From contig NC_068984.1 in assembly GCF_001194135.2 (NCBI RefSeq), forward strand, positions 15,231,425 to 15,295,424: a DNA stretch of 64,000 nt, given 5' to 3'. Below, piece after piece: positions 12,201 through 64,000 of the stretch. Numbering within the stretch: position 1 is the stretch's first letter; each line of letters begins with the position of its first letter. Both the position numbers and the translations under genes were made by a program. Source of the stretch: Octopus bimaculoides (Eukaryota). Under the pieces are notes generated by a model. It worked only from the letters and a program-made list of their open reading frames with translations. It did not search any database and was not told the DNA's origin.

Positions 12201-15200
12201 TTGAATAGAAATTCTGAATAAACATTGAGGATACCTTTAACCTGATTGTGATTATTTCATGAAAAAAATTAGATTTTACAAATGAGTAGTAACCATTAAC
12301 AAATAAACAGCTGCTCTAACAATGTGTGTGAAAGACTGGATTTTCAGATATATCTTATATATACTGAAAAAAAATATATACAAATATTTTTAAAGAAAAA
12401 TACTGAATATACCTGGGTCATTTTATCTACAGGGGTTGGGATACCATCTATAACAAGAGGTGGTAATTTGTGTAAATTTGGATCTTCTTGTTGTGAGGGT
12501 GGTGCTTGTTGTGCCAGTACTGATTCCAAGTCTTGCATAATAATTCCTTTAGAATTGCGAACCTTGTAGGAAAAAAATATCATAAGTTGTGATATCAGTT
12601 CCAATTTAAATAATTAGTCACAGATTTAATTACATAGAAATCTCAGCTAAAAAAAAAAAACATATCAACGAATTTCTTTCCATCTGTACACTGCACTCAG
12701 TCTGATACTATTATTACGTTAATATTGTGGTGGCATTGCAGGTGTTCTGTATGCTTCCATGTGGATTGTTTTATTTAAAGTAACAACCCTTTAATACCCT
12801 TTCTTTTATATAAGGCAGCAAGCTGGCAGAAACATTAGCATGCCGGGCAAAATGCTTAGCGGTGTTTCGCTTGTCTTTACATTCTGAGTTCAAATTCTGC
12901 CAAGGTCAACTTTGCCTTTCATCCTTTCAGGGTTGATAAATTAAGTACCAGTTGCGTACTGAGATCGATCTAATCGACTGGCCCCCTCCCCAAAAATTTC
13001 AAGTCTTGTGCCTAGAGTAGAAAAGAATATCCTTTCTATAATAGGGACAAGGCCTGAAATTCTGGGAGAGGAGGCTAGTCGATTCCATCAACTCCAGTTC
13101 TCAACTGTAACTTACTTCACTGACCCTGAAAGGATGAAAAGCGAAGTCAACCTCAACAGTATTTGAACTCAGACCAAACATTTTCTCAAGCGTGCTAACA
13201 ACAAGCCATTTAATATCAAATACAACTTCATGCTGCATCTTTTGGATAACATTGGTTAACTATGACACTTATAATAGTATAATATTTTATTATTAATCTA
13301 CTAACTGACATACCCAGTAATTACTGGGAAAGCGGGGCTTATCCCTTGGTTCCGCTAATCCAATAACAACAATACAAAGTATGTAGCCCTTAAAATGGGT
13401 TTTTGTGCACTTACAGAGAATACTGAACTGTCTTACACCGGATCTTGTTTTTAGGAATTCCCAATAAGTAAAGAATACCCAAATTGTGAAGTCAGTTATG
13501 TAATAACATGAAATTAGTTACCCAATAATAAGAATTCAAATAAAGTAGCCCCAAAAAGGGCTTTAATGCATTCCCAGAGTGTATAGAACTTAGGAGGAAA
13601 TACTAATAAGGTATGTATACTAAAATCGTGAAGCATGTTACGTAATAACAGGCTAATCGGATATGAGATAATAACAATTCAAAGTAAATAACTCAGAAAA
13701 GGGCTTTTGTGCGTTCCCAGAGAATATTACCCTCAGCGGCGCTAGTGTTGGTATATTCGTTAATAATTCACTAGCTGTTGTTTAGGAAAATACTATTTAC
13801 TTGTTTAAGTGTTATACTGGATAAATTGTGAAAATAACTCGAACAGTCTTCTACTATAGCCTCAGGCCAACCAAAGATTTGTGAATGGATTTGGTAGGCA
13901 GAAACTGAAAGAAGCCCGTCATATATATATATATATGTATATGTATGTATGTATATGTTTGTGTTTGTCCCTCCAGCATCGCTTAACAACTGATGTTGGC
14001 CCCTGTAACTTAGCAGTTCAGCAAGACAGATCAATAAAATAAGTACTAAGCTTCCAAAGAATAAGTGCTGGGGTCGATTTGTTTGACTAAAGGCAGTGCT
14101 CCAGCATGGCCACAGTCAAATGACTGAAACAAGTAAAAGAGTAACTAAATGATAAGAAAACAGAAACTTTATCTCCCTGACTATTTCTTCTCGTACAATA
14201 AATTATTTACAAAATTTCAAAATTGTGTAGAAATGAATAACTTACCACTGTTTCTAAAGGCTGAGAACCAAACACTTTAAAAGACTGGTAACTTTGGTTA
14301 GGTTTGCCGGGAGTACAACAAAGTACAACTGCTTGTTGCCCTACACGTGTTGAGTATTCTTCAACAATATACCGTAGTTTTCTGATGAAGATATAAAACA
14401 ATTTATTTTGAAAAAGCTTTAAAATATGAATAGCCATAAAAAAATTATAAAGACTTGATCAAATACCCACATACATCTGATCTAGCACTAACACTTAAAA
14501 AAAAAAAAACAATTAAAAACAATGAAACATTTAATAAATGGAATGAACATGTAAAACAGACAATTGGAGTGGCTGTGTGGTAAGTAGCTTGCTTACCAAC
14601 CACATGGTTCCGGGTTCAGTCCCACTGCGTGGCACCTTGGGCAAGTGTCTTCTACTATAGCCTCGGGCCAACCAACGCCTTGTGAGTGAATTTGGTAGAT
14701 GGAAACTGAAAGAAGCCCGTCGTATATATGTATATATATGTGTGTGTGTGTTTGTCTCCCACCAACATCGCTTGACAACCGATGCTGGTGTGTTTACGTC
14801 CCCTGTAATCTAACAGTTCAGCAAAAGAGACCAATAGAATAAGTACTAGGCTTACAAAGAATAAGTCCTGGGGTCAATTTGCTCGACTAAAGGCGGTGCT
14901 CCAGCATGGCCACAGTCAAATGACTGAAACAAGCAGAAGAGCAAAAGAGTATCAAGATAAAACAACACAGTACATCACTAATGCTAACACAACACTAATA
15001 AACCAATGAGAAAGCGCTACACAGTTGCCCAACCTGTAAGAAATAAGTCAAATCTCCATTAAAATCAGCCCCTTCTATCTTAAAAAAGAAATGGTATATT
15101 GAACACTGTAGACATTCCATCCATGATAGTCATGAATGGAATGTCTTTAATCATATGTCTGTGTGAGCAGGGCTGACTTGAGGTCAAACAACAATGCAAC

Positions 15201-33381: not shown

Positions 33382-33833
33382 TTATTTACATTTGACTTCA
33401 TCTTGTTTGTTGTTAACATGTTTCAACTGATATACTCTCCAACCTTTATCAGATGTCTTGGGGAAATTTCAAACCTGAGTTCTCATTCCTAAGGTATTTT
33501 TCGATATTATTATTATTAAGGTCACTGCCTGAAAATTGAACTCGGAATCTTGGGGTTAGTAGCCCGTACTCTTAACCACGACGCCATATGCTTGTGGACA
33601 ATTATGGAGTGAATTTTAAGGTTTATAAATCTAATATTTTCCTATCCTTCCTTAATACCAGTTCCCATATGCTACTCATATCTGCACTTGGTCTGCTATG
33701 TCCTAGCATATGTACTACTTCTTTTAGTTTTTGTATTTTCCAGTGGTGTTCTCTGTCTATTACAAGATGAGGACAAATATCTGTCAAATGTAAATAATGT
33801 ACATAATTCCTCATCTCTCAAATATAGAACTGT
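33382..33833. mobile_element. Third, older copy of the tRNA/hammerhead element, nested in a TTAA-ended MITE
   Basis: Degenerate left arm 33382-33593, centre gcttGTggac, and the same terminal tail gatgaggacaaatatc...aatatagaactgt (33763-33833). Confidence 0.75.
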
Positions 33834-34898
33834 ATTACCATATTTCTGTTGTGTTCTGTATTTCAATTAATTTTGAAAATAAAGGATTTACTAAACTATC
33901 TTGGTCATTACTAAATTTACATGCAGTTTTAATTTAGATTACTTAATAGTGAAAGCTTGTATCATAGAAGAAGGGTCAGTTGATATGAAAAGGGTTAAAA
34001 TGAAGTATTTCGATTCTAAATGGAGATGGAAACCCAGTTGTACAAGTGAAACAGTAGAATTTTAAGAAACTAGTAATGGTTTGTGTGGGTAAATATTAAG
34101 TACAAAAGGTGTGCAAAGTGTAATAAATCATGTCATGAGGAAAAGTCTAATCTTTCAGGCAAAACCCTGTCACAGAGATGAAATGTTTATTTAATAATAC
34201 TGTTAAATAGATTTGTAAGTTGTGACAATGAGAAAAATATTTTAAGGAGAGGTAATAAGAGGATAATGGCCAACGTAAGGAGATAATGCACAAGAGCTTT
34301 GTTATGGAAGTATTTTACAGCATCTGCACAAGAATTGCAGAAATATACTGGGATTGAACCAATCAATTATACACATAAAACAAGTCCCATGATAACAGTG
34401 GTTAATAGGATTTCCACTTGAAGTCCTTATTAAAAAAACAAATTTATCTGGTGGAAAAACAAGCCCTTTTCTTTTGAAATTCAACTAATAATTTGAACTG
34501 AGCAGAGCCAACAAATAACAGCAATTATAGCGTGAATCTACAGTTTATGGTGGTGACCTGCACCACTGTATGATACCGATTTATAAGTTTGATACGGTAT
34601 CGAGTGTTATTTAAACCATGCACACAGAAGACATTGGTCACAAAATATGAATTAGTAAGCCCTTCAACTTGTGTTACATTTCATCAAGTCAGCTATTTGC
34701 GATTCCCATATATGTTGAACTTGTCAGAATTCTACTCAGAAACAGAAATTTCTATAACACCAAATATATTTTCATTACAAAAGCCTCAAGACACAACACA
34801 TACATAACCCATGACAGCATACAAACACAGGATCACTGAGGGTACCTTTACATATTCATTTGAGAGTAGCCAAACCAGCCTTAAATCATTGCCCTATC

Positions 34899-38163: not shown

Positions 38164-38739
38164 TTAAGAATCAATGACATAATTGGGATGGACAACAAGG
38201 AAGGGGTCATCCTCTCTAACAAGGCTCTCATCTTCTTTATGCTTGGACATGGATTTCAGCCCAGTCTGTTTTAGCTCTATGAGGACATGGTCGTGATGAA
38301 TCAAACGATCAATGACTTTCTCAACAATAGTTTTACGTTCAATGAGTTCTGCTTCACTATCAATTTCTCCTTCGATTTCATGTAGATACCAACCAATCAA
38401 CTGACTACGTCGAGTACCGGAATCAGTAGTCTCTTCTTGCTCTTCCATACGTCTCATGTTCAACACCAACAAATTCGCCATATGTTTATATTCTTCATAT
38501 GTTAATTTCAGGCTTTTCTTTGGTTTGTCTGATTTGGGAGATTTTTCTTGTTCAGGAGAGCCAGATGGCACTGCATCTTCAGATACACCATTTTGTTCAC
38601 TGTGTGGCACCTCTGAGGCTGGTTCCTCATCTACCTCCATAGCTTCATCCCCTTCTTCCAAATGTATGTCTGGCTGATCAACACGGATAATTGACTTGTT
38701 AAGCAAACGGAATGCTTCTTTCACATGTTTCGGTTGAAC
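38164..38739 (-). CDS. MCM6: MCM6 coding exon 2 (VQPKHVKEAFRLLNKSII...winged-helix Cdt1-binding domain...VHPNYVIDS*); total protein 825 aa
   Basis: Acceptor aatttttgtag at 38740-38741; phase-0 join YCQEM|VQPKHV; TAA at 38166-38164. The C-terminus WYLHEIEGEIDSEAEL...DPFLVVHPNY is MCM6-specific. Confidence 0.97.
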   Translation of the reverse strand, partial: VQPKHVKEAFRLLNKSIIRVDQPDIHLEEGDEAMEVDEEPASEVPHSEQNGVSEDAVPSGSPEQEKSPKSDKPKKSLKLTYEEYKHMANLLVLNMRRMEEQEETTDSGTRRSQLIGWYLHEIEGEIDSEAELIERKTIVEKVIDRLIHHDHVLIELKQTGLKSMSKHKEDESLVREDDPFLVVHPNYVIDS

Positions 38740-39249
38740 CTACAAAAATTGGAAAATGGAAAAAATAATTTACTTCTTAAAACTTGCATTACCGAGTCCA
38801 GACTAACTACTAAAGTTTATAGTTATTAATTTAACAAGACATAGTATATTTAATTTTTTTAAAATTGTTTCAGAACTTCAGAAGCCTTCTAAAAAAGAAA
38901 TGTGAGTTTTATTCCTTGAAATCTAAGAAGTCTACAACTCTTGCTTCACATTCTTCTTTTGTTAAATATCTAGTCTCAACAAATAATGTGTATTTTGATA
39001 CTTAACTCTTAATTACAGTTATTACAATAAAATACTATCCTAAATTAGACTACAGCTAAAAGCAATTTTGTATTTATAAAATTAAGATGCCCAACTTCTC
39101 TCAGAAAAATCTTAAACCCAATTCCTAGATGCGATTTCTCCAAGAGCCAGGAGAGTTCTGCATAGTAGCTTGCTGTCAAATCTCCCTTAAAATTACATTT
39201 TACTGTCTTAAAAAAATGACGGATATTTGTCCTCATCTTGTTTATTGTT

Positions 39250-39295
39250 AACACAACATTTTGGCTGATATACCCTCCAGCCTTCATCAGGTGTC
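39250..39295 (-). ncRNA. Minimal type I hammerhead ribozyme motif; stems intact, catalytic core mutated
   Basis: GACAC-CTGATGA-A-GGCTG-gagggtatat-CAGCC-AAAAT-GTT-GTGTT. Stem II is 5 perfect bp and stem I is GACAC/GTGTT. GAAAC has become AAAAT through two CpG-type transitions. Confidence 0.7.
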
Positions 39296-39571
39296 TTGGG
39301 GAAATTTCGAACATGGGTTCTCATTCCCAAGGTATTTTTCGATGTTATTATTATTATCGTTACTCAGGTCACTCCTGGAATCGAACTCGGAATCTTGGGG
39401 TTAGTAGCCCGCACGCTTAACCACTACGCCATATGCCCACGGGCATATGGCGTAGTGGTTAAGAGTGCGGGCTACTAACCCGAAGATTCCGAGTTCCATT
39501 TCCAGGCAGTGACCTGAACAACAAAATCGACATACCTCAGGAATGAGAACCCAGGTTCAAAATCTCCCCAA

Positions 39572-39617
39572 GACACCTGATGAAAGTCGGAGGGTATATC
39601 AGCCGAAACGTTGAGTT
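39572..39617 (+). ncRNA. Minimal type I hammerhead ribozyme motif; core intact, stem II degenerate
   Basis: GACAC-CTGATGA-A-AGTCG-gagggtatat-CAGCC-GAAAC-GTT-GAGTT. Confidence 0.7.
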
Positions 39618-40056
39618 AACAACAAACCAGATGAGGACAAATATCCGTCAAATGTAAATGGTTCCTCATCTCTTGAATATAGAACTGTATAATATATTCT
39701 TAGGTATACAAAGGTCTGTGTTGATCTCAGAGTCAACTTCAGAGCTAAATAATACTTTCTCCAATGAATCATACAAATAACTAAATTTTCAAAAGTATCT
39801 CAAAGCAAAAGAACTTGACAATAACATTGCTGGATCATTATATCTGTGAGGACCAATACTCACTTCTGAGCTGGTCAACATATTCAGTCTTCTTTTATCT
39901 GTCTATATCATTCATACCAACTCAGCAGTTTTTTTTTCCTCCATTCATCAGTTATCAAGTTTTAGATCATGGATTTAACCTTTACAGAAATTACTTTCTC
40001 AAGATGCATTAAATATGTTAAATAGAAAAGCAAAAAAAAAAAAAAAGTTTTCCTAC

Positions 40057-41958
40057 CATTTCTTGGCAATAAAGCCGAGCCATAGCCTCTGAGAGTCGAA
40101 TCAAACTTTCAAGTTGACGAACAGTTATTCTCCAAGAGGAGCGAGTTGCACCAGTGCCATCTCGTTGTCTAAGATGTTTGTATTCTTCAACCATGTATTC
40201 CATAGATTCTTTGCTGATCTTTGGTTTAAACTGTCGAGCAAACATAAGGTAGCGCCGGATTTCTTCTACGGTGTAGGTACGAACCACAGATTGTTCACCA
40301 CGGCAATGCAAATCAACAATGCGAGTGGCAATTGCATAATCTATTGCTTCGTTGCATTCATCAACAAGAATGAAGAAGAGATCAAATCTTGACATTATCG
40401 GTGCTGTCAGAGTTATATTCTGTTTCAAAGGTTTTGTCCTATCATAGCGTCCCCCGATTGGGTTTGCAGCTGCCAAAATTGAAGTGCGAGCATTCAAAGT
40501 GGCCTTCACACCAGCTTTTGTGATTGAAATTGTTTGTTGTTCCATCGCTTCATGAATGGCAACCTGATCTCTTGGATCCATTTTATCAAATTCATCGATG
40601 CAGCAAACACCATTATCAGCTAACATAAGAGCACCAGCTTCGATCACAAACTCGTGAGATTCTTCGTCACGAACAACAGCAGCCGTTAGACCAGCAGCAC
40701 TACTAGCTTTTCCACTTGTGTAAACAGCTCGAGAACTGAACTCTTCCACTTGCTTTAACAGCTGGCTTTTGGCAGTACTAGGGTCACCAACAATACATAC
40801 ATTGATGTCTCCTCTCAAGTTCGTTTGTTCAGTTGTCACTTTTGGCACTCCACCAAACAACATCAACAAAATCCCACGTTTAATTTCTTCACAACCATGA
40901 ATTGTAGGAAAAAGACTTGAGCAGAGGTTTTGGTACAGGTTTTTATCAAGACTCATCTCATATATTTTATGCCATTCTTCATCGGTCATCTGTTTCTTAA
41001 GAGCCTGAGCAGTAATCTCCTCGTCTTTATTTTCTCGGTTACCGCCAAGTCTAGGGTTACTTGGAGTCACTGTGCAAGCAAGGAAGGCTAATTTATATGT
41101 TAGATCTCGCACACCAAGGGCTTTAAGGCCCCTGACCCCTTCAGTCTCATAGCCTTCATTTCCTTTCATTCTTGTGGATGTTTCGGCACGTGCTCCAGGT
41201 ACAGTGATCTGGGATACATCAGGGACCACAATCAGAGTACCTGTGAAATCACACTTGTCTCCAGCCTGGGCCATTTCAACAGCTTCAGCGCGCATGATGA
41301 CTTCCAGACTTCTGGGAATACCACCTCTTGGCAATTCGGACTGGGTTTCCTGGACCCTAGCCTTTTGAAAATCTACAAATCTGGATTTATTAACATCCAA
41401 AAGAAATTTAGTTCTATTATTACAGACAGGGTTCCGGCATATGCTGGGTTGTGTATACTTAAATTGCTGTTCAACATCTTTGATGACTGTGCGACACTCT
41501 AAACACATGAAAGTTCCAGAAACCAGTTCTGGATGGACTGGATGAGTACGAACAACTTGACAGGATATACGAAGCAACGTACCAATTTTAGCAGCTGTGA
41601 GATCTCGAACCTTTAAAGTCGTCGGCACATCCATAAAACTCACATAGAACTCTTTAGAAGGAGGAACATGACCATGATCCTGGGCAAAATTACGCAGAGC
41701 AAAACACAAGTATGGATAAACACGATAATATTCTTCTAATATGGTTGTTGCCAACTGTTGATTGTAATTTTCAATGTCCTCAAAGCTCACTGACAATGTG
41801 TTTCGCTCCGGACGAATCAATTCTTGAACCTCAGGCAAGTATTTCAACTCTCCATCAACTGTAAATTCTTCCAGGAAATCCTGAAACAATTTCTGGCACC
41901 GTTCTCCAATTTGATCTTTAACCTGGTTAGTAGACTGTGTCAGTTCAGCAGCATCCAT
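40057..41958 (-). CDS. MCM6: MCM6 replicative helicase subunit, coding exon 1 (634 codons in one exon)
   Basis: MDAAEL start (the ORF-track start at 41964 is a TTG). Zn finger CLEC...CRNPVC, Walker A GDPSTAKS, Walker [10 protein letters not shown], arginine finger [13 protein letters not shown]. Donor GTAGGA at 40056. Upstream acceptors at 42002-42003 or 41966-41967. Confidence 0.98.
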
Positions 41959-42478
41959 TTTCAAACTGCAAATCTATGACAGAAGCTGAACAACACTTGA
42001 TCTGGAAAAAAAAAAGCATAAAATTCAATGGTTTTTATTACTATTACATTTTTTATGCTTTATTGGAATACAATACATTTAAATGTACAGCACCTTAACA
42101 TTACCATTTCAACTCAATCCTTGGTTACCAGGTGTTGGGCGGGGGGGGCATAATTCTAAGCCAAGAGCTCAATCTCATATTCATTGTTTNNNNNNNNNNN
42201 NNNNNNNNNNNNNNNNNNNNNNNNNNNNNNNNNNNNNNNNNNNNNNNNNNNNNNNNNNNNNNNNNNNNNNNNNNNNNNNNNNNNNNNNNNNNNNNNNNNN
42301 NNNNNNNNNNNNNNNNNNNNNNNNNNNNNNNNNNNNNNNNNNNNNNNNNNNNNNNNNNNNNNNNNNNNNNNNNNNNNNNNNNNNNNNNNNNNNNNNNNNN
42401 NNNNNNNNNNNNNNNNNNNNNNNNNNNNNNNNNNNNNNNNNNNNNNNNNNNNNNNNNNNNNNNNNNNNNNNNNNNNNN

Positions 42479-43276: not shown

Positions 43277-45900
43277 CGTCGTTTAACGTCCGCTTTCCAT
43301 GCTGGCATGGGTTGGACGGTTTGACTGAGGACTGGCGAACCAGATGGCTGCACCAGGTTCCAATCTGATCTGGCAGAGTTTCTACAGCTGGATGCCCTTC
43401 CTAACGCCAACCACTCCAAGAGTGTAGTGGGTGCTTCTTACGTGTCACTGGTATGAGGGCCACTCAGGTAGTACTGGCATTGGCCACGCTTGGATGGTGC
43501 ATTTTACATGCCACTGGCACGGGAGCCAGTCAGGTGGCACAGGCAATGACCATGCTTGAATGGTGCTTTTTACATGCCACCAGCATGGAAGCCAGTCAGG
43601 CGGCACTGGCATCGACCATGCTCAAATGGTGCTTCTTACGTGCCAATCANNNNNNNNNNNNNNNNNNNNNNNNNNNNNNNNNNNNNNNNNNNNNNNNNNN
43701 NNNNNNNNNNNNNNNNNNNNNNNNNNNNNNNNCGCAGTTTATTGCCCAATGGTTGAAGGGTACTCTTAAATGGGCTGGTTATGATGCACTGGCATAGGCC
43801 ACGGTTACAGTCTCACTTGGCTTGCCGGGTCTTCTCAAGCACAGCATATCTCCAAAGGTTTCAGTGACTTGCCACCGCCTCCGTGAGGCCCAAAGTTCAA
43901 AGGTTGTTCTTCAACACCTCATCCCAGGTCTTCCTCTTCCACAGGTTCCCTCTACTGCTAGAGTGTGACACCTTTTCACACAACTGTCCTCATCCATATG
44001 TAACACATGACCATACCAGCACAGTCATCTCTCTTGCACACCACATCTGATGCTTCTTATGTCTGACTTTTCTCTCAGGGTGCTTACACTCTGTCATGTA
44101 TGCACACTGACATTACACATCCAGCAGAGCATACTAGCTTCATTCCTTGCATGCTTACACATGTCCTCAACAGTCACAGCCCATGTTTCACTGCCATGTA
44201 GCATGGCTATTTGCACACATGCGTCATATAGTCTAACTTTTACTCTGAGCGAGAGGCACTTTGTCACCAGCAGAGGTAGGAACTCTCTGAACTTTGCCCA
44301 GGCTAGCTTTATTCTAGCAGCTACACTTTCAGAGCATCCACCCCTGCTACTGACTTGGTCACCTAGGTAACGGAAGCTATCAACTACTTGTAGCTTTTCC
44401 CCCTGGAATGTGACAGAAGCTGTTTGCTGCACATTTTCAGTGTTTATTGTCCCTGAGCAATTGCCACACACAAAATCTATCTTCTCAGTTAGTCTTCCTT
44501 TGATATTGCTGCACCTCTTATGTGTCCATAGCTTACGCCAGGTACATCTTATGGAGTTTCTACATACGCCTTTTCTGCAGATCTAGCAGGGCCATCTACC
44601 TGAAGTGATTTGTGGTTTGTCTGACTTCCTACTTATTAAGACTTTGATTTTTGCTAGATTGACTCTAAGGCTTTCTCCATGTCAATGAAAGCCACTTACA
44701 GAGGTTTATGTTTGGCAAGGTATTTCTCCTGCATCTGTCTTATCAGAAATATAGCATCAGTGGTGCTCTTCTCTGGCACAAACCCAAACTGCATCTCGTC
44801 TAGACTGACTCTCTCCCTAATTAGTTGGGCTATGACCCTCTCCGTGACTTTCATTACCTGATCCAACAACTTGATACTTCTGTAATTATTCGTATCAAAA
44901 GCGTCACCCTTACCTTTCTAGCAGTTGACTATGGTGCTGCTACACCAGTCATTGTGTATGACTCCTTCGTGTATCACCTGGTTAACTATACGGGTGATTA
45001 GGCTATAGCCAATACCGCTGGATATTTTAAGCATCTCTGCGGTGATTCCTGATGGGCCAGGGGCTTTCCCTGTCTTCATACCCTTAATTGCTTTATCTAC
45101 CAAGATACTGTCAATTAGGATAGCTAGTCCCTCTGTTGGGTTGACATTTGGCAGACTCTCTTTCTCCCATTCGTTCTCTTCATTTAGCAACCTTTCATAG
45201 TGGCGTCTCCAAGTCTCTCACTTTGCAGCCTCAACGAACACAAGTGAGCCATCATCCATGCGGACACATTTCTCTCCTATGACATCATGATTCTCTCTCA
45301 CACACTGTCTTGCAACATGAAACACTTCAAGTCTTTGGTTCTCACGATGCAGAACATTGGCAATTTTTTTCTTATCTGCTTCCCTTCTGGCTAAATAAAA
45401 CTGTCTCCTAGCTTCCTTCTGGCAATCGGATACAGTTTCCTGCTACCACCAATCTTCCAGTCTTTCCATGCCTGTTTCTTTACCTTAATGGCCCTGTCAA
45501 CTACATTGTTCCACCACCACATTACCTTGGGTTGAGAGAGGACTTTGCACCATCCACAGATCTGGTCAGTAGCACTCAACAAGTTGTCCCATAGAAACCT
45601 CCACATTACGTGAAGCTATATCCCCCTCTATTTTGTCAAAAGCTTCGAGTAATACATCTCTAAATTTCTGTCCATTTGTAAGATCTTTAAGCTTCCAGGC
45701 TCTTCTTCGCCATGCTGGCCATCTTCTGGGCATCCATTTAGCCCTGATCCTGAAGTCGCTAACTACTAATCAATGTTGTGGGGTGCATTCTTAACCTGGG
45801 AAGGTTTTGGCATTTATAAGTAGCCATCTCTCCCGTCTCCTGGTGTGGATGTAATCAATTTGACCAGAGCAGTAGGTGACTGGCAGGTTTCCTGAAGTTT
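43277..45900 (-). mobile_element. 5'-truncated RTE-clade LINE, pseudogenised, in the MCM6 5' UTR intron
   Basis: APE C-terminus (IDYI...LVVSDF), GKAPGPSGITAEMLK, QFGFVPEKSTTDAIF, a Cys/His finger, VDSFRYLGD, RLYDACV..AMLHGSETW, then a 3' UTR with tandem units and a gacgttaaacgacg tail. Contains stops, frameshifts and a deletion of the RT core. Confidence 0.9.
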
Positions 45901-51570: not shown

Positions 51571-52122
51571 TTAGGGAGGATAAACTTCCGCAATGTGTTC
51601 GAGAAATGTATAGAAATTCTCAAAGTTTTTCTTCGCAGTAAATCCATACATTTCTCGATACATTGACTCATCAACGCGGGACCATTTCATGTCGCCCGAT
51701 GATCCAGTCACATATTTCAGCCGTCTTTTAATTCGGAGCGGAGCTTTGTCCAGAAGCATCTTCCCCGAACACACTTCTCTACAAAACTCATACCACTGGA
51801 TTGCGGTTTTGTTATCTACTCCAGTGTATAAAGCCGCAGTAGATATCGGCGCCTCGAAAACGAAATTGAAGACAATATGGAATATTTGTTGTAAGGACAA
51901 CTTTGACTTTTCCATAAAAGTCTTTGTCCTTATTGAAATGTTTTTCTTGCAGTTTTTGCACCGCCACACAAATCCATCCAGCGATCTGGCCGACTTCTTC
52001 AAAGTGATATCGTGTGTGCAAACACACGTTTTACTTGTGGCAATAGTACCGTTGCCTTTCAAGAATTCCAATATATTTTCTGGAGCAAGCTGCTTGAATA
52101 ATTCTTCAATTGGTAAACACAT
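51571..52122 (-). mobile_element. Merlin (IS1595/IS1016-like) DNA transposase ORF, 183 aa, lacking the DDE catalytic core
   Basis: DGFVWRCKNC-x3-SIRTKTFMEKSKL (Zn ribbon region), AIQWYEFCREVC, and C-terminal RIKRR..G..VDESMYR...FLEHIAEVYP. The VEIDES/WVFG/SD.W/VNHS/HTN.IE block is absent. First ATG is at 52122. Confidence 0.8.
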
Positions 52123-52576
52123 TTTCAATACGATCCTTTGCGCTGGTTAACAGGTTGCTTGTCGCTGGTCAAATGATTCTCTTTTAGGGTTCTGCACACG
52201 TGCGAAAAAGGGAAGAATTTGACCGTTGGAATCATGGTCAAATGATTGCCTTCGACACAAAATTCCTTTTGTTTNNNNNNNNNNNNNNNNNNNNNNNNNG
52301 GTCAAATTCTTCCCTTTTGTTCGCGATTTTGGCGGGGTGGGGGATTGAAATTTTTCAAACAACTTTTTTACACAATCATAATCTACGTGTTTTTTTACGC
52401 ATTTCTAAAAAAAAAAAAATTCCGAAAATGGGGTGGGGGCGAAATTTTCAAATTGAGATTTTTGAAATTTTTTTTCCAGAATCGGATTCTCCATGGTCTG
52501 AAACATAGGATTCCATAAAATAAAAAAAAATTAAAACGGGGGGTATACCCAGATTACATATAGTCCATCTGGATCG

Positions 52577-52905: not shown

Positions 52906-55811
52906 GGGGATTTAGTTCCATAAATTCCATAAGTTGTATGGCATTGTGACAATCTGCCTCTCCAACCCTCATTCCCATACAATCTTGCAAACCACCCAGC
53001 TACCTATTTCTCTTCAGCTTGTGCCTTGTGGGGCCATCTGAGAACCTTATTGCCATCATTTATGTCTTGTAGTTCCTACTGATCATTTTCTATTTCTCCC
53101 CCCCCCCCCTTCTCCCCTTCTAGATGGGAGTAACCATGCAGATCCTTCTTCAAGAACCTGCTCTTCTCCACCTCTCTCATTATCCCCTCATCCCCTAGCA
53201 TGAAGCTAATTCCCCATCTCCCCAGGGTTCATATCCTGCAAATTGCATGGTGACCTCAGCAGTGCAGCTGGTATGGAAAAAGCACCTATTCCAGCTGTAA
53301 AATGGTTGGCATCCAGCCATAAAAGTCATGCAGAAGGAGACACTGAAGCTCAATGCAGTCCTTGGACACATCAGATCCATCCAACCCATATCAGCATGGA
53401 ACATGGACAATAAATGATGATGATATATATGGTGCCACATAAAAAGCACCCAATGCACACTGTGAAGTGTTTAGAGTTAGGAAGGGCATCCAGCTGCAGA
53501 AACCAAGCCAATACACACTATGGAACTTGGAGCAACCCCTGCCTTTACCAGTTCCTGTCAAACCATCCGACCCTTGCCAGCATGGAAAATGGACATTAAA
53601 TGATGATGATAATATATATTTTGTGCTGCTCTCTACCCTTTCTCTACTGCAAATTATCATCCCCTCCTGCTTGGGCCACTTCTGTTTCTTATCACCTTCC
53701 ACTCCAAATTCATATTTACCATCAACCACACCTTCACTCTTCTTCACCATTCACAACATTCACCTCTACCCCCATCTCTAACCATTCCTTACTTTCCTCC
53801 CACACTCTTACAAACTTACTCATCAGCTCCTCCCAATCCTCTGTCTCTTCTACTCATCTTCTCATACTTTGGGCATACGCCCTCACACCTTGTCACTACC
53901 ATCTTTATCTCTCTTTCTCACTACTCCCACCCACCGTTATATAATGCAGGGCAGCTGACATGTATAGCAAGACATCTGTTCCTATCCTATCACCTTTCAG
54001 TCTCTCTCAGCATCAACTATAAAGCTACTTACTATGACGCACCCACTCAATCTATTTTCCATGCTGGCATGGGTTAGATCGTTTGACAGGAGCTGGCAAG
54101 CGGGAGAGCTGCACCAGGCTCCAGTTGTCAGTTTTAGCTTGGTTTCTACGACCGGATGCTCTTCCTAATGCCAACCACTTTACAGAGTGTACCATGTGTT
54201 TTTTATGTGGCTCCAGCACAGGTGTTTTTTGTGTGATTTATATTTTTCTTTGTCTTACAAGTTACAAGATAACCTTCACTAGTGTAGGTGGTACAAATAA
54301 TGCATCCTGTACTCTCAGTAAAGTAGTTGGCATTAGGAAGGGCATCCAGCCATAGAAACCATGTCAAAGCAGACACACTGGAGCTTGATGTAATCTTTTG
54401 GCTCATCACATCCTGTCAAACTATCCAACCTATGCCAGTAAAGGAGACAGATTTTAAATGACGATGATAATGATGGCGATTAGTTACTTAGCTTCAGGTC
54501 CTGCTACATTTTGGTACGGTGGTAATTTTGAAAAAACGTAAGTGATAGAATTGTATCTTTAAATATCATCACCGTTTAACGTCCATTTTCCATGCTGGCA
54601 TTGGTTGGACGGTTTGACAAAGGCCTGGAGAGCCAGCAGCTGCACCAGGCTCCAATCTGATCTGGCAATGTTTCTACAGCTGGATGCCCTTCCTAATGCC
54701 AACCACTCCGAGAGTGTAGTGGGTGCTTTTTATATGCCACCGGCACAGGAGCCAATCAGGCAGTCCTGGCATCGATCACATTTGGATAGTGCTTTTTATG
54801 TGCCACCAGCATGGGAGCCAGTTGGGGCGGTGGGTACTGGCATCGACCACGTTTAGATGATGCTTTTTACATATGCCACCAGCATGGGAGCTGGTCAGGC
54901 GGACCTGGTATCGACCACGTTCGGATGGTGCTTTTTATGTGCCACCAGCACAGGAGCCAGTCAGGGGACACTGACATCAACCACGTTCGGATGATGCGTT
55001 TTACGTGCCACGACAATGGGAGCCAGTCAGGGGGCACTGGCCACAGCTACGATTTTGGTTTTACTTGACTCAACAGGTCTTCTCAAGCATATGATATCGC
55101 CCGACGCATCAGGAGTACTCTTAAATGGGCTGGATATGCAACAGTAGCGTCGGTCATGGCTGCGATCTAAAATATCATCTATAGGGTACAAGTTGGCTCC
55201 TTCAAACATATTACATTACTCTGTGATAAAAAAAACTAACATAAAATTCTTGGTTCTATTCTAAAATACATGATCAAAATAATGAAAGTAGTATGTGATA
55301 GCACATTAGTAAGTTACTCTTTCACTTCTCACAGTATGTTCGTTGAATGATGATATCATCATGCTGAGGCACTGTCTTGAAGAGTTCTAATCAAAGTGAC
55401 TCCAATATTTTCAGAGCACTGACTGACACAAGTAAAATATATTCTGTACCTTTGAAACAAAATGTTAGAAACAAAATGTTATAATCACTACATCATTAAT
55501 TTATTAAATTTATTTTTGTTTTCAAAACTATAAAAAATGCATTGTGAGAATGGATATAGTCTCTAAACAATCTTGTGAAAGCAGCAAACATGTTTCGGTC
55601 TTATTAACCCTCTTTAATTAAAGATTTTTCAACTCAGTTATATTACACATATGAATCCCTGACATAGTGTTATCCACTCAAAAGCATACCCTGTACTAGA
55701 TTATTGTCCATGTATTACAGCCAATAACTCAGGCATTTCACTTAAAGTGCAATTTCTTCACTTATGTTCACCAAATTGGCTAATCACATTTATCCAACAT
55801 CTTTGCATACA

Positions 55812-56083
55812 TTATTTACATTGGACGGCTATGTGTCCTCATCTTGTTTGATGTTACCACAACGTTTCGGCTGATTTACTCTCCACCTTTCATCAGGTGT
55901 CCTGGTAAAATTTTGAACCCAACCCTGGGTTCTCATTCCTAAGGTATTGTTTTGCTGATATTATTATTATTATTATTATTATTTATTCAAGGCACTGCCT
56001 GGAATTGAACTCGGAATCTTGGTTAGTAGCCCAATCTCTTAACCATTATACTATATGCCCGTGGGCATATATAGAACAGTATA
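55812..56083. mobile_element. Second copy of the tRNA/hammerhead element with collapsed right arm and 13-bp TSD
   Basis: Hammerhead motif on the minus strand at 55856-55901 (CTGATGA and GAAACGTT intact). Centre gcccGTgggc at 56057-56066. TSD atctttgcataca at 55799-55811 and 56084-56096. Confidence 0.8.
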
Positions 56084-59000
56084 ATCTTTGCATACACATT
56101 AATTAATTTCTTTTATTTGTTTCTGGCTTTTGTGTTGTGCATCAAATACACCACATCTAAGTTTTTTTTTTTTTTTACTTTAGTTGCTACAGGTTCCCTC
56201 GGTACTTTCTAAAAAGGTGCTTTTGATATAGATCTTATAGTTGAATTACAGATATCATATAGACACAAGAGTGGCTGTGTGGTAAGTACAGCTTGCTTAC
56301 CAACCACATGGCTTCGGTTGTCAGTCCAACTGCGTGGTACCTTAGGCAAGTGTCTATTATAGCCTCGGGCTGACCAAAGCCTTGAGAGTGGATTTGGTAG
56401 ACGGAAACGGAAAAAAAAAACCGTCGTATATATGTGTGTGTGTTTGTTTGTTCCCCCAACATCGCTTGACAAACGATGCTGGTGTGTTTAAGTCCCCGTA
56501 ACCGAGCGGTTCGGCGAAAGAAACTGATAGAATGAGTTCTAGGCTTACAAAGGATATGTCCTGGGGTTGATTTGCTCGACTAAAGGCGGTGCTCCAGCAT
56601 GGCCGCAGTAAAATGCCTGAAACACGCAAAAGAGTAAAAGAGATATAGCTTCATAGAAAAGACGTAGTAATTCTCTAAATTTTCTTGATACTATCTTTTT
56701 TTTTTCCTTCTTTCGTTATTATTCTTACATATAAGAGATTACATGGATATGTTAGAAGTGGGATTAGGCAACTAAGGCAGACTTTATAACATACTAAAGA
56801 AAGAACTAACGTAATGTGATAAGCACAATTCATCAAGGTTATATTAAGGGGAGGTAAACATTGCTTATCAAATTAACCAAAATGTAAGGGAGACAAAAAA
56901 ATCTAAAATTTTCCTTTTTTTAAAAATTCGTTAACGCATTACTTCCAATGAGTTTAATATATGAACTGTGATGGTTGCATTTTGCATTTGGTTCCTTGTC
57001 AATTTATTTAAAGTACAAATTTTAATAAGTTATCTAACTTCCCTTTGCAAATAAGAGGACTTCAATATGGTTGCTCGACTTGCTAAAGATAGTTGCCAAA
57101 TTGGCAAATCTTAAGATTCAACAGATAGAAATTGAAAATTTAGTGGCTGGATGTGGTTTTTGTTGAATACTTCCATTTTATAAGATTTTCCTTGCTTAAT
57201 ACTCTCATTCATTAATCTGTTAATCGTTGAATATAAACTCTTAAATTGTTTTAATAACACCTTTGGAATTCATATTGATTATAAAGGTTGACGTTATTTA
57301 TATAAAAACAAGTGTTAGTCCTGGTGAAATGAAGTGCTTCCGCTTAGAAGATGAATGCTTGTAGGAGGCCAGTTTGATTTTTTTCAAAAGCAATGCTAAT
57401 ACATATCTTAGTATGTTTCTCTGAACCATATCAGTGAACGATATCGTCATCATTTAACATCTGGCTTCAATGCTGGGAAATGGCCTTTTAATGCCGATAC
57501 TTTACAGAATACTGGGTGATCTTATCCTGGCACCAGCACTAGTTAACTAACGGGGCTAAGAACCTAAGGTGGCCCCCTACAACTGTGGGAGAACAAAAGA
57601 GAAAACTGGTGATGATTCTAGGCAGTTGAATGGGAAGAAGACAAGATGGGGGAGTATAGGGGAGAGAAGAGATTTGTGACAGGGTTTAGGGAGAAGAAAG
57701 ATGATATAGAGTTCTCTGTAGAAAAATGTCTGGCTGTATTATGTTCTTCACTTATTTCCAAGTAATTTTAAAATCTTTCACTTTTTACGTGTAGATTCAT
57801 AAAGTTTACCCACAGGAGAGCATCATTTTATACTGCACATGACAATCGGCTAAAAGTCAAACTCTAGCTCTTTAGCATTCAAACCAGCCAGATCAGGCCC
57901 AAATATTCTACTTGTTTTGTGTTCAAACTGACCAGATTAGACCTCTCTATCCTGCAATCATCATCATCATCATTTAACGTCCGCTTTCCATGATAGCATG
58001 GGTTGGACGATTTGACTGGGGACTGGCGAACCAGATGGCTACACAAGGCTCCAATCTGATCTGGCAGAGTTTCTACAGCTGGATGCCCTTCCTAATGCCA
58101 ACCACTCCGAGAGTGTAGTGGGTGCTTTTACGTGCCACCGGCACGAGGGCCAGTCACATGGTACTGGCAACAGCCATGCTCAGAAAGGTGATTTTTACGT
58201 GCCACCTGCACAGGATCCAGTCCAGCGGCACTGGCAACGACCTTGCTCAAATGATTTTCTAACTTATTAATCGCAATTTGTTCCATCCCTTCCAGCACTC
58301 ACAGCTGCATGTCCAGTGAGTGAGTCTCTATACAGTTACTCAACTTGCTACAAACAGCAGTCAAGTCTCATTCAAATGGCACCCTACTATCTTAAGAGAA
58401 GGACACATTAAAATCCTAAAAGGATTGGTTGGTTACAAATGGAAAACCTTTGTTCACAAGTCTTCTTATCTTGAAACCAAACATATTCAATCTTTCTAAA
58501 ATATCTATACATATTAATAAAACATTTAGACACTACTAGAATATAATCCTACAATCATTACTCCCAAACAATACTTTGATACAATCCTAAAATCACTGTC
58601 TCTTATCTGACCGACACCAAAATAGCACACAGCATCAGTTATCTCCCTTCGTTCATCCTTGTTTTCTTGCCATCGAAAAGCAATCGAATTTAGTTTTCCA
58701 ATTCCAATTCGAAATATTATAACACACTTTTATATAACTACATTTAACACGAACCAATGATGGAGCCCTCAATGAGTTACTTAACCCCCTAAAAAAAAGT
58801 GTAAATTCCTAAAAACTCTTTCTACCTCCTTTTATTCAACATATTTCCCTCCCAGATTCACACACTTATTGCAGCAGTCCTTCAGTTTTTCTAAGCCCTG
58901 TAAAATAACTTGCAAGATTAGGCCTCCAACCAGGCCTTTCGTGATACCCTTAAAGCCAGGAACCTTTCAGCACCCCCTCGAACATAAGGACTGCTCTTCA

Positions 59001-63479: not shown

Positions 63480-64000
63480 CTGGAGGGCTGGTGGAACCAA
63501 TGGAAATGTTATGTGACAAGGTGGAAATGGTGAGAGGGTTTTGTTATTTGGGAGATGTAGTGGATGTGAAGCAGCTGTGACATCAAGAGCAAAACTTGAC
63601 TGGGTGAAGTTCAGGGGATGTGGACCACTGTTATATGGGAAAAGGTTCTCATTGAAGACGAAAGGAAGAGTCTATAGTTGTGTGAGAGCTGTAAGGCTGT
63701 ATGGGAGTGAGACATGGTGTCTGAGGGAGAGAAAGATGACAATTTTGAGAAGGACTGAGAGAGCAATGGTGAGAGAAATGTGTGGTGTGAGGCTGTTTGA
63801 TAAGAGGAGGACTGTGGACTTGATGGGGATGCTGGGGTTGGATGAATTGCTGGAACGGCCGGCATGGATGAATGGAGTGCAGTGGTATGGGCATGTGTTG
63901 AGGGATGAGGAGCAGGTTCTGAGGTGGGTGCTTGGGTTTGAGGTAAATGGACCGCGGAAGTAAGGTAGACTGAGAAAAACGTGGAGGGGACAGGTGGAGG
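63480..64000 (+). mobile_element. RTE LINE RT C-terminal fragment running off the window end
   Basis: LKTKGRVYSCVRAVRLYGSETWCL, RRTERAMVREMCGV, WYGHVLR, GPRK.GR.RKTW. Confidence 0.8.

What the first reader, a model, noticed from the sequence alone, without database searches (positions are those of the whole stretch)
39217..39688. Back-to-back tRNA-promoter and hammerhead-ribozyme retroelement (palindromic SINE-ribozyme) in the MCM6 intron
Seen: a palindrome with arms of about 220 bp, centred on gccc|ac|gggc. Each arm reads outward as a tRNA-like head (A box TGGCGTAGTGG, B box GTTCGATTCC on the left arm), an AT linker, then GACAC-CTGATGA-A-[GGCTG gagggtatat CAGCC]-GAAAC-GTT-GTGTT (consensus of the four motif copies in this window). 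The right arm ends in a hairpin GATGAGGA...TCCTCATC and the terminus AATATAGAACTGT. The left arm has no T4 run before the motif and ends at a T7 run (39216-39210). Established: CUGANGA/GAAA is the hammerhead core. Minimal type I hammerheads whose stem III is a short palindrome (here ACGT), and which are proposed to act as dimers, occur in Penelope-like elements. Schistosoma SM-alpha is a precedent for a tRNA-related repeat carrying a hammerhead. Inference: this is a non-autonomous element that borrows a Penelope-like RT. It either fires two divergent Pol III transcripts that supply each other's stem III, or moves as one fold-back RNA. The copy in the sense of the MCM6 pre-mRNA (39295-39250) has lost G12 and is buried in the hairpin, which would spare the host transcript. 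I cannot tell whether the family is already catalogued.
Basis: partly seen in the sequence, partly recalled or inferred. Interest (0 to 1): 0.92.

Follow-up and report, generated by a model that had tools for sequence, protein, structure and literature searches.

The report
Fold-back hammerhead SINE in octopus
This is an old, decayed copy of a short octopus retroposon with a tRNA-type promoter head and a Penelope-type minimal hammerhead ribozyme, inserted head-to-head the way Penelope-like elements insert; it is a good new example of known kinds of element, not a new mechanism.

Summary
Window 39217-39692 is a head-to-head pair of one ~270-nt unit in the single intron of Octopus bimaculoides MCM6. 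It sits at the same site in O. vulgaris and O. sinensis.

Each unit has a tRNA-like head with A and B boxes, an AT linker, a hammerhead motif, a 3' hairpin and the terminus ATATAGAACTGTAT. The family consensus is a textbook Penelope-type minimal hammerhead. No present-day copy still fits it.

All three loci of the family in the window share one composite build:
- a full-length arm that stops about 35 nt short of the 3' end;
- a head-to-head junction;
- an opposite arm of variable extent that carries the 35-nt tail;
- a 12-bp target-site duplication around the whole composite.

Published Penelope-like insertions have this architecture. So the palindrome is best read as a by-product of integration, not a working device.

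No autonomous partner could be examined. Divergent Pol III transcripts that complement each other, a fold-back RNA as the moving unit, and selection sparing MCM6 have no support. The closest precedent is schistosome Sm-alpha. Interest is moderate.

The parts
39217..39438 (-). Locus i, tail-less arm (here called I arm). It reads head to hammerhead on the - strand, which is the MCM6 sense. In O. bimaculoides it is cut short at its outer end by a secondary deletion.
39439..39440 (.). Centre dinucleotide AC. It lies 5' of the right arm's GGGC. In loci ii and iii the same AC lies 5' of the other arm, and it is taken to be the 5'-terminal dinucleotide of the RNA template.
39441..39692 (+). Locus i, tail-bearing arm (F arm): head, linker, hammerhead, hairpin and terminus ...ATATAGAACTGTAT(AA).
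39448..39458 (+). A box TGGCGTAGTGG of the F arm. The mirror copy on the I arm is at 39421-39431(-).
   Evidence: tRNA model 21.6 bits on the I arm; ARAGORN at relaxed threshold
39377..39386 (-). B box GTTCGATTCC of the I arm. The F-arm counterpart at 39493-39503 is degenerate.
39572..39617 (+). Hammerhead motif of the F arm. The core CTGATGA/GAAAC is intact. Helix II is down to 4 of 6 pairs and helix I has one mismatch.
39250..39295 (-). Hammerhead motif of the I arm (MCM6 sense). The helices are intact but G12 is now A and C15.2 is now T.
39630..39670 (+). 3' hairpin GATGAGGA...TCCTCATC. In all three loci the tail-less arm ends inside its loop.
39651..39690 (+). One-sided 35-40-nt tail, absent from the opposite arm.
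   Evidence: compare
39691..39702 (.). Right copy of the target-site duplication AATATATTCTTA. The left copy survives only in O. vulgaris (L002, about 13441-13452).
55800..56096 (.). Locus ii. TSD TCTTTGCATACA at 55800-55811 and 56085-56096. Full I arm at 55812-56060(-), with its hammerhead at 55856-55901. Centre GT at 56061-56062. F remnant GGGCATAT+ATAGAACAGTATAA at 56063-56084(+).
33382..33846 (.). Locus iii. I arm at 33382-33593(-), with its hammerhead at 33412-33457. GT plus a 4-nt fold-back, then 168 nt of unrelated filler, at 33594-33761. F tail at 33762-33834(+). Right TSD copy TTACCATATTTC at 33835-33846; the left copy survives only in O. vulgaris.

Best explanation
The unit is a ~270-nt non-autonomous, SINE-like retroposon of octopuses. 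It consists of a tRNA-derived head with internal Pol III A and B boxes, an AT-rich linker, a Penelope-type minimal type I hammerhead, a 3' hairpin and a defined terminus.

Inferred steps:
1. Pol III transcribes it from a start 2 nt upstream of the tRNA-like body (AC-GGGC...).
2. The RT/GIY-YIG machinery of a Penelope-like element (PLE) copies it into the genome.
3. Integration itself makes the head-to-head structure. One cDNA starts about 35 nt inside the 3' end and runs to the RNA's 5' end. A second product, primed at the true 3' terminus at the other nick, is extended by fold-back or self-priming. It is of variable length and is joined head-to-head.
4. The two nicks are 12 bp apart.

The copy in the MCM6 intron went in shortly before the O. 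bimaculoides / O. vulgaris split and has decayed neutrally since. Today it is a passive 220-bp hairpin in the pre-mRNA. Its hammerheads are almost certainly dead.
For: Shown:
- A repeat family with a discrete 5' end. All four full arms start at GGGCATATGG.
- tRNA likeness. The A box is perfect and the B box is 10 of 11. Rfam tRNA scores 21.6 bits, E = 0.07. ARAGORN calls a cloverleaf only at relaxed thresholds.
- The consensus passes a strict minimal-hammerhead descriptor: one extra nucleotide after A9, G10.1-C11.1, a 6-bp helix II, CG at 15.2/16.2 with no loop III, and a 5-bp helix I. There were 0 hits in 100-200 shuffles of the window. These are the features listed for PLE hammerheads.
- A 12-bp duplication surrounds the whole composite in 3 of 3 loci.
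- The tail-less arm ends within a 3-nt range, about 35 nt from the terminus, in 3 of 3 loci. The tail is on one side only.
- The tail-bearing arm is full, 22 nt, or filler plus 73 nt.
- The two arms of locus i differ at only 9 pre-speciation positions in 200 columns. Each arm has 6-12 lineage-specific changes. This fits arms that were identical at insertion.

Literature match:
- Penelope copies in Adineta vaga have a head-to-head inverted pLTR that is 37 bp shorter, a 31-bp tail at one end, TSDs of 8-10 bp, foreign sequence captured between solo pLTRs, and self-priming proposed as the cause. The same build is described.
- Dual minimal hammerheads 100-700 bp apart on opposite strands occur in S. 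mansoni.
- PLEs make up 6.8% of the O. vulgaris genome.
Against: - No autonomous PLE sharing the hammerhead, hairpin and tail could be retrieved, so the partnership rests on architecture and ribozyme type alone.
- Only three independent loci, all from one 64-kb window, support the 'always head-to-head' rule and the consensus.
- The tRNA score is below Rfam's gathering threshold (21.6 against 29) and ARAGORN needs relaxed settings.
- No Rfam hammerhead model matches at E <= 10. This is expected for a motif with no helix III, but it is still a negative result.
- There is no evidence of transcription or cleavage.
- The monomer RNA fold is unremarkable, z = -0.39.
Confidence: 0.65

Rival explanations
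1. The arms are not a separate SINE. They are solo inverted pseudo-LTRs: extremely 5'-truncated or ORF-less copies of an autonomous octopus Penelope-like element whose terminal repeat happens to contain a tRNA-like stretch.
For: Solo and inverted pLTR pairs with TSDs, sometimes with captured filler, are documented for Penelope. pLTRs are about 200 bp and carry the hammerhead. Most minimal hammerheads are interpreted as truncated PLEs.
Against: All four full arms begin at the same nucleotide, and that nucleotide is +1 of the tRNA-like body with A and B boxes at canonical positions. Truncated copies should have scattered 5' ends. No RT or GIY-YIG coding remnant adjoins any of the three loci.
Confidence: 0.17
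2. The head-to-head dimer is itself the unit of function or movement. Either two divergent Pol III transcripts supply each other's stem III, or one fold-back RNA is the transposition intermediate.
For: Head-to-head junctions occur in 3 of 3 loci, and TSDs surround the whole composite. The ACGU stem III is self-complementary, so dimers are plausible.
Against: In two of three loci the second arm is only 22 nt, or 4 nt plus unrelated filler plus 73 nt. Those composites have no second promoter or ribozyme, yet they were integrated with the same TSD length. The arms are asymmetric because the tail is on one side only. Any two transcripts of the family could dimerise in trans without being neighbours. 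In a single read-through RNA the second hammerhead is antisense and the sense one is buried in a -344 kcal/mol hairpin.
Confidence: 0.08
3. A fold-back DNA transposon or MITE with ~220-bp terminal inverted repeats.
For: It has long inverted arms, a short centre and flanking direct duplications. A palindromic Harbinger MITE in Xenopus is a precedent for self-folding repeats.
Against: The termini are not symmetrical: one side has a 35-nt tail, and the other arm is of variable extent. The arms carry a tRNA-type promoter and a hammerhead oriented outward from a head-to-head junction. From my own knowledge, untested here, 12-bp TSDs of unrelated sequence are not typical of known DNA transposon superfamilies.
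Confidence: 0.04
4. Two independent insertions of the same SINE in opposite orientation, or an assembly artefact.
For: SINEs make up 11.6% of the annotated O. vulgaris genome. The window contains assembly gaps.
Against: The junction is exact at the 5' ends in three loci. A single TSD surrounds each composite. The arms are of equal age. The structure is present in three separate assemblies of three species.
Confidence: 0.01

Closest known systems
Sm-alpha / Sj-alpha SINE-like elements of Schistosoma
   Same: Short, non-coding, high-copy retroposons with a tRNA-derived Pol III promoter head (tRNA-Gln-like in S. mansoni) followed by a type I hammerhead.
   Different: Sm-alpha carries a canonical hammerhead with loop-loop contacts that Rfam-type searches detect. 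It often lies in direct tandem arrays, where cleavage frees monomers. The octopus unit has the minimal, helix-III-less PLE-type motif, shows no direct tandems, and is inserted head-to-head. It is in a different phylum and shows no sequence similarity in any search done here.
Insertion architecture of endonuclease-positive Penelope-like elements (pLTR, inverted pLTR, one-sided tail)
   Same: A head-to-head inverted terminal repeat with a palindrome at the junction. The inverted copy is about 35-37 bp shorter. A 30-40-bp tail sits at one end only. TSDs are short (8-10 bp there, 12 bp here). Foreign DNA is captured between solo repeats. The hammerhead lies inside the repeat.
   Different: There is no RT/GIY-YIG ORF. 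The repeat starts with a tRNA-like Pol III head, which is not described for pLTRs in the papers read.
Minimal hammerheads of metazoan PLEs (Cervera & de la Pena 2014; Lunse et al. 2017)
   Same: CUGAUGA, one extra nucleotide, a G10.1-C11.1 helix II longer than usual, GAAA, a palindromic 15.2/16.2 pair with no loop III, and a short helix I. They are proposed to act as dimers. 'Dual motifs on opposite strands 100-700 bp apart' were noted.
   Different: Those dispersed motifs were read as truncated PLEs. No tRNA head was reported.
Animal non-LTR retrozymes, and non-autonomous PLE derivatives such as Chlamys-N4_cRei
   Same: Non-coding, hammerhead-bearing or PLE-dependent short elements. A 2026 preprint argues that vertebrate retrozymes derive from PLE pLTRs.
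   Different: Retrozymes are direct tandem repeats whose two same-strand hammerheads excise a circular RNA. Here each strand carries one sense motif only, and no direct repeat exists.

Membership tests
Type I minimal hammerhead (PLE type) | Catalytic boxes CUGANGA and GAAA | tested here: met
   Present in the consensus. CTGATGA is intact in 3 of 4 window copies and GAAAC in 3 of 4.
Type I minimal hammerhead (PLE type) | Helices I and II base-paired around the core | tested here: inconclusive
   Met by the consensus: helix II 6 bp, helix I 5 bp. No present-day copy passes, even with one mismatch allowed per helix. Four independent arms are too few to test covariation.
Type I minimal hammerhead (PLE type) | Extra nucleotide between A9 and 10.1, a G10.1-C11.1 pair, and a palindromic 15.2/16.2 pair with no loop III | tested here: met
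   CTGATGA-A-GGCTGG...TCAGCC-GAAA-CG-TT. The features are as listed.
Type I minimal hammerhead (PLE type) | Match to a curated hammerhead covariance model | tested here: not met
   No Rfam hammerhead family matched at gathering score or at E <= 10. Those models include a helix III that this motif lacks.
Type I minimal hammerhead (PLE type) | Mg2+-dependent self-cleavage 3' of GUU, as monomer or dimer | not testable with these tools
   Needs in vitro transcription of the consensus.
tRNA-derived SINE (SINE2) | 5' head derived from a tRNA, with internal A and B boxes | tested here: inconclusive
   The A box is a perfect match and the B box is 10 of 11, at positions 8-18 and 53-62. Rfam tRNA scores 21.6 bits against a gathering score of 29. 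ARAGORN finds a cloverleaf only at relaxed thresholds, in 4 of 11 heads.
tRNA-derived SINE (SINE2) | Discrete 5' end, short and non-coding, dispersed copies with TSDs | tested here: met
   Four of four full arms start at the same base. The window holds three loci. 12-bp TSDs occur in 3 of 3.
tRNA-derived SINE (SINE2) | 3' region shared with an autonomous partner | not testable with these tools
   No octopus PLE or LINE 3' ends could be fetched. No related sequence was found in 64 kb plus 3 x 24 kb.
tRNA-derived SINE (SINE2) | Pol III transcription | not testable with these tools
   No expression data are available. The consensus has no internal T4 run.
Non-autonomous Penelope-like element | Head-to-head inverted copy with a one-sided 30-40-bp tail and a short TSD around the composite | tested here: met
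   3 of 3 loci, compared.
Non-autonomous Penelope-like element | Sequence identity of the terminal region with an RT/GIY-YIG-encoding element of the same genome | not tested
Retrozyme (non-LTR, metazoan) | Direct tandem repeats, each with a hammerhead on the same strand, allowing excision of a circular RNA | tested here: not met
   No direct repeats in 38800-40100. Each strand carries one sense motif.

The most novel reading that the evidence does not exclude
This would be the first explicit SINE-Penelope partnership: a Pol III, tRNA-promoter SINE whose 3' module is a PLE hammerhead plus tail. Because PLE-type integration makes fold-back dimers, each insertion would create a self-folding ~220-bp dsRNA wherever it lands in a transcribed region. 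If the family is abundant, it could be a major unrecognised source of the exceptionally many near-perfect dsRNA loci and of the hyper-editing reported for O. bimaculoides.
Probability: 0.3. Interest if true: 0.6.

Novelty: new member of a known kind. Interest (0 to 1): 0.4.

Why it matters
It links three things that are usually described apart: tRNA-promoter SINEs, Penelope-type minimal hammerheads, and the odd head-to-head, one-tailed insertion scars of Penelope-like elements.

A short unit with a fixed 5' end makes those scars easy to read. The exact start, stop and turn-around points are visible. That could help work out how PLE reverse transcription starts and how the inverted copy arises.

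It also shows that many 'dispersed minimal hammerheads' may belong to SINE-like passengers rather than to truncated PLEs.

In octopus, fold-back insertions inside introns are ready-made ADAR substrates.

For MCM6 itself there is no sign of function. The copy is a neutral, decaying passenger.

Tried and rejected
- Rfam at gathering score and at E <= 10. No hammerhead hit. The miRNA-family hits are simply the palindrome centre.
- ARAGORN at default settings found nothing.
- Exact-pattern scans for the hammerhead or the head in metagenome, viral and prokaryotic genome collections gave 0 hits.
- A protein search with the open frame across the unit found only two O. bimaculoides products, A0A0L8FV75 and a short dystrobrevin-beta isoform with an exonised copy. 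The gene range of the latter was too long to fetch.
- A LINE RT fragment was used to harvest more octopus DNA. The top representative was not on record. A 163-kb ENA contig proved unrelated to octopus and lacks the family.
- Logan contigs of another octopus stop about 60 nt before the insertion site, so no empty site was obtained.
- Argonauta has the same intron but it cannot be aligned and holds no copy.
- The 168-nt filler of locus iii was tested as a diverged arm and is not one. It scored 11, against 16 +/- 5 for shuffles.
- Cofolding of two hammerhead segments gave an extended duplex and was not informative.
- Selection against the sense-strand ribozyme was considered and rejected. One core change per lineage in the sense arm and none in the antisense arm is what neutral rates predict.
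Whether the family is already in Repbase or Dfam could not be checked.

Full report
**What is there.** Window 39217-39692 is a head-to-head pair of one repeat unit. The repeat finder reports three collinear inverted segments with a 2-nt centre. blastn aligns the arms at 84% over 224 nt. In the MCM6 sense the region folds into one hairpin of -344 kcal/mol, z = -29.7 against shuffles. The flanking ORFs are the two coding exons of MCM6 on the minus strand. The protein is 100% identical to Octopus bimaculoides MCM6, so the element lies in the gene's single intron.

**It is a repeat family, and the copy is old and real.** Two more loci lie in the window, at 33382-33846 and 55800-56096. I fetched the orthologous MCM6 loci of O. 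vulgaris, O. sinensis and Argonauta hians.
- The palindrome is at the same intron position in both Octopus species, at about 88% identity. Locus iii is there too. Argonauta has neither.
- K2P distances are 0.126-0.18 between the two arms and 0.08-0.107 between orthologous arms.
- The arms differ at only 9 positions that predate the species split, against 6-12 lineage-specific changes per arm.
- So the arms were probably identical when inserted, shortly before a split dated at 13-33 Myr. They have decayed independently since.

**Anatomy of the unit.** An alignment of ten arms gives a 268-nt consensus with these parts in order:
- GGGCATATGG..., a tRNA-like head. The A box is perfect and the B box is 10 of 11. 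Rfam tRNA scores 21.6 bits, below the gathering score. ARAGORN finds a cloverleaf only at relaxed thresholds.
- An AT/TAA linker.
- GACAC-CTGATGA-A-GGCTGG-AGGGTATA-TCAGCC-GAAA-CG-T-T-GTGTT.
- A hairpin GATGAGGA...TCCTCATC.
- The terminus ...ATATAGAACTGTAT(AA).

The consensus passes a strict minimal-hammerhead descriptor that found nothing in 100-200 shuffles of the window. It has the four extra features that Cervera & de la Pena give for Penelope-type minimal hammerheads:
- a nucleotide between A9 and 10.1;
- a G10.1-C11.1 pair;
- a long helix II;
- a palindromic 15.2/16.2 pair with no loop III.

No present-day copy passes, in any of the three species. Each has its own disabling changes. No Rfam hammerhead model matches.

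**The decisive feature: one composite architecture in all three loci.**

| Locus | Tail-less arm | Junction | Tail-bearing side | TSD (12 bp) |
|---|---|---|---|---|
| i | full | AC | full arm | AATATATTCTTA |
| ii | full | GT on the + strand | GGGCATAT + ATAGAACAGTATAA, 22 nt | TCTTTGCATACA |
| iii | full | GT on the + strand | 4 nt of head + 168 nt unrelated filler + 73 nt of tail | TTACCATATTTC |

- The tail-less arm always runs from the head to ...AATGTAAATAA(TG), about 35 nt short of the terminus and inside the hairpin loop.
- One arm per locus carries an extra AC 5' of GGGC.
- The filler of locus iii is not a diverged arm and is shared by all three species.
- For loci i and iii one TSD copy survives in O. 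bimaculoides and the other only in O. vulgaris.
O. bimaculoides lost the last nucleotides of the arm and the left TSD in a deletion between two CCGTCA repeats.

**Comparison with what is known.** The published Penelope insertion scar has this build. In Adineta vaga:
- an inverted pLTR abuts the direct one head-to-head, with a palindrome at the junction;
- it is 37 bp shorter;
- a 31-bp tail sits at one end only;
- TSDs are 8-10 bp;
- unrelated DNA can be captured between solo pLTRs;
- self-priming was proposed as the cause.

Craig et al. describe the same for other clades. Dual minimal hammerheads on opposite strands 100-700 bp apart were noted in S. mansoni and read as truncated PLEs. PLEs make up 6.8% of the O. 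vulgaris genome, which also has 1279 'unclassified SINE' families. The closest precedent for a tRNA head joined to a hammerhead is schistosome Sm-alpha/Sj-alpha. A 2026 preprint argues that vertebrate retrozymes are non-autonomous PLE derivatives. I found no paper describing hammerheads in octopus repeats.

**Best explanation (confidence 0.65).** This is a SINE-like, Pol III-promoted, hammerhead-bearing passenger of Penelope-like elements.
- Shown: the family, the fixed 5' end, the minimal hammerhead in the consensus, the composite scar, the TSDs, the age and the decay.
- Inferred: Pol III transcription from AC-GGGC, use of a PLE RT/endonuclease, and the two-primer plus fold-back origin of the inverted arm.
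- The palindrome is then a by-product of integration. In two of three loci the second arm has no promoter or ribozyme at all, yet those composites were integrated in the same way.

**Rivals.**
- Solo inverted pLTRs of an autonomous PLE (0.17). The identical 5' ends at tRNA +1 argue against this.
- A fold-back DNA transposon (0.04). The asymmetry argues against this.
- Double insertion or assembly artefact (0.01).

**On 'sparing the host transcript'.** The sense-arm G12 loss is specific to O. bimaculoides. O. vulgaris and O. sinensis instead have A9 changed to C in that arm. The antisense arm keeps its core but loses helices or the cleavage site. With about 11 core positions and 4-6% change per lineage, these counts are what neutrality predicts.

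**Limits.**
- Three loci from one window.
- No autonomous partner, no expression data and no cleavage data.
- Repbase and Dfam could not be queried.
- Attempts to obtain more octopus DNA largely failed.

Noticed in passing
window 38164-38724 and 40018-41964 (- strand); L002-L004: Octopod MCM6 (825 aa) has only two coding exons and one intron, in Octopus and in Argonauta. From my own recollection, not checked here, MCM6 has many introns in other metazoans, so this could be a retrocopy that replaced the parent gene.
   Followed up: no
window 56240-56420 and five other places: A different high-copy SINE with 6 blastn hits in the window. It produces spurious ORFs with the peptide ...LQLDALPNANHS... 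in many frames. It is probably the abundant octopus SINE.
   Followed up: partly
L002 12265-12973, next to the tail end of the element: O. vulgaris has a lineage-specific insertion of about 700 bp right beside the element, at or within its right target-site duplication. Logan contigs of another octopus sample (SRR11869394) break at what looks like the same insertion.
   Followed up: no
window 39210-39232; L002 about 13218; L003 about 12683: Each species has lost a different piece of the composite through a small deletion. O. bimaculoides lost the left TSD and the arm end, between two CCGTCA repeats. O. vulgaris lost the palindrome centre, with the arms joined at the self-complementary CATATG. 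O. sinensis lost the 3' half of the tail-less arm. At locus iii the two TSD copies were likewise lost in different species.
   Followed up: partly
window 39554 (+) and 39312 (-): A second B-box-like motif, GGTTCGAAATTTCC, lies in the body of the unit just upstream of the hammerhead. It may be a remnant of a second tRNA-like module.
   Followed up: no
window 44097-45217 (-), 63517-63960 (+), 51571-52128 (-): LINE reverse-transcriptase fragments and an ORF that, by eye and without a family search, resembles an ISXO2-type transposase. None is Penelope-like by inspection.
   Followed up: partly
P0246 (O. bimaculoides dystrobrevin beta isoform X1, 94 aa) and P0245 (A0A0L8FV75): Two annotated O. bimaculoides proteins contain translated pieces of this repeat (…EGWRVYQPK.CVNNKQDEDKYPS…). 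So copies are exonised or mis-annotated as coding.
   Followed up: partly
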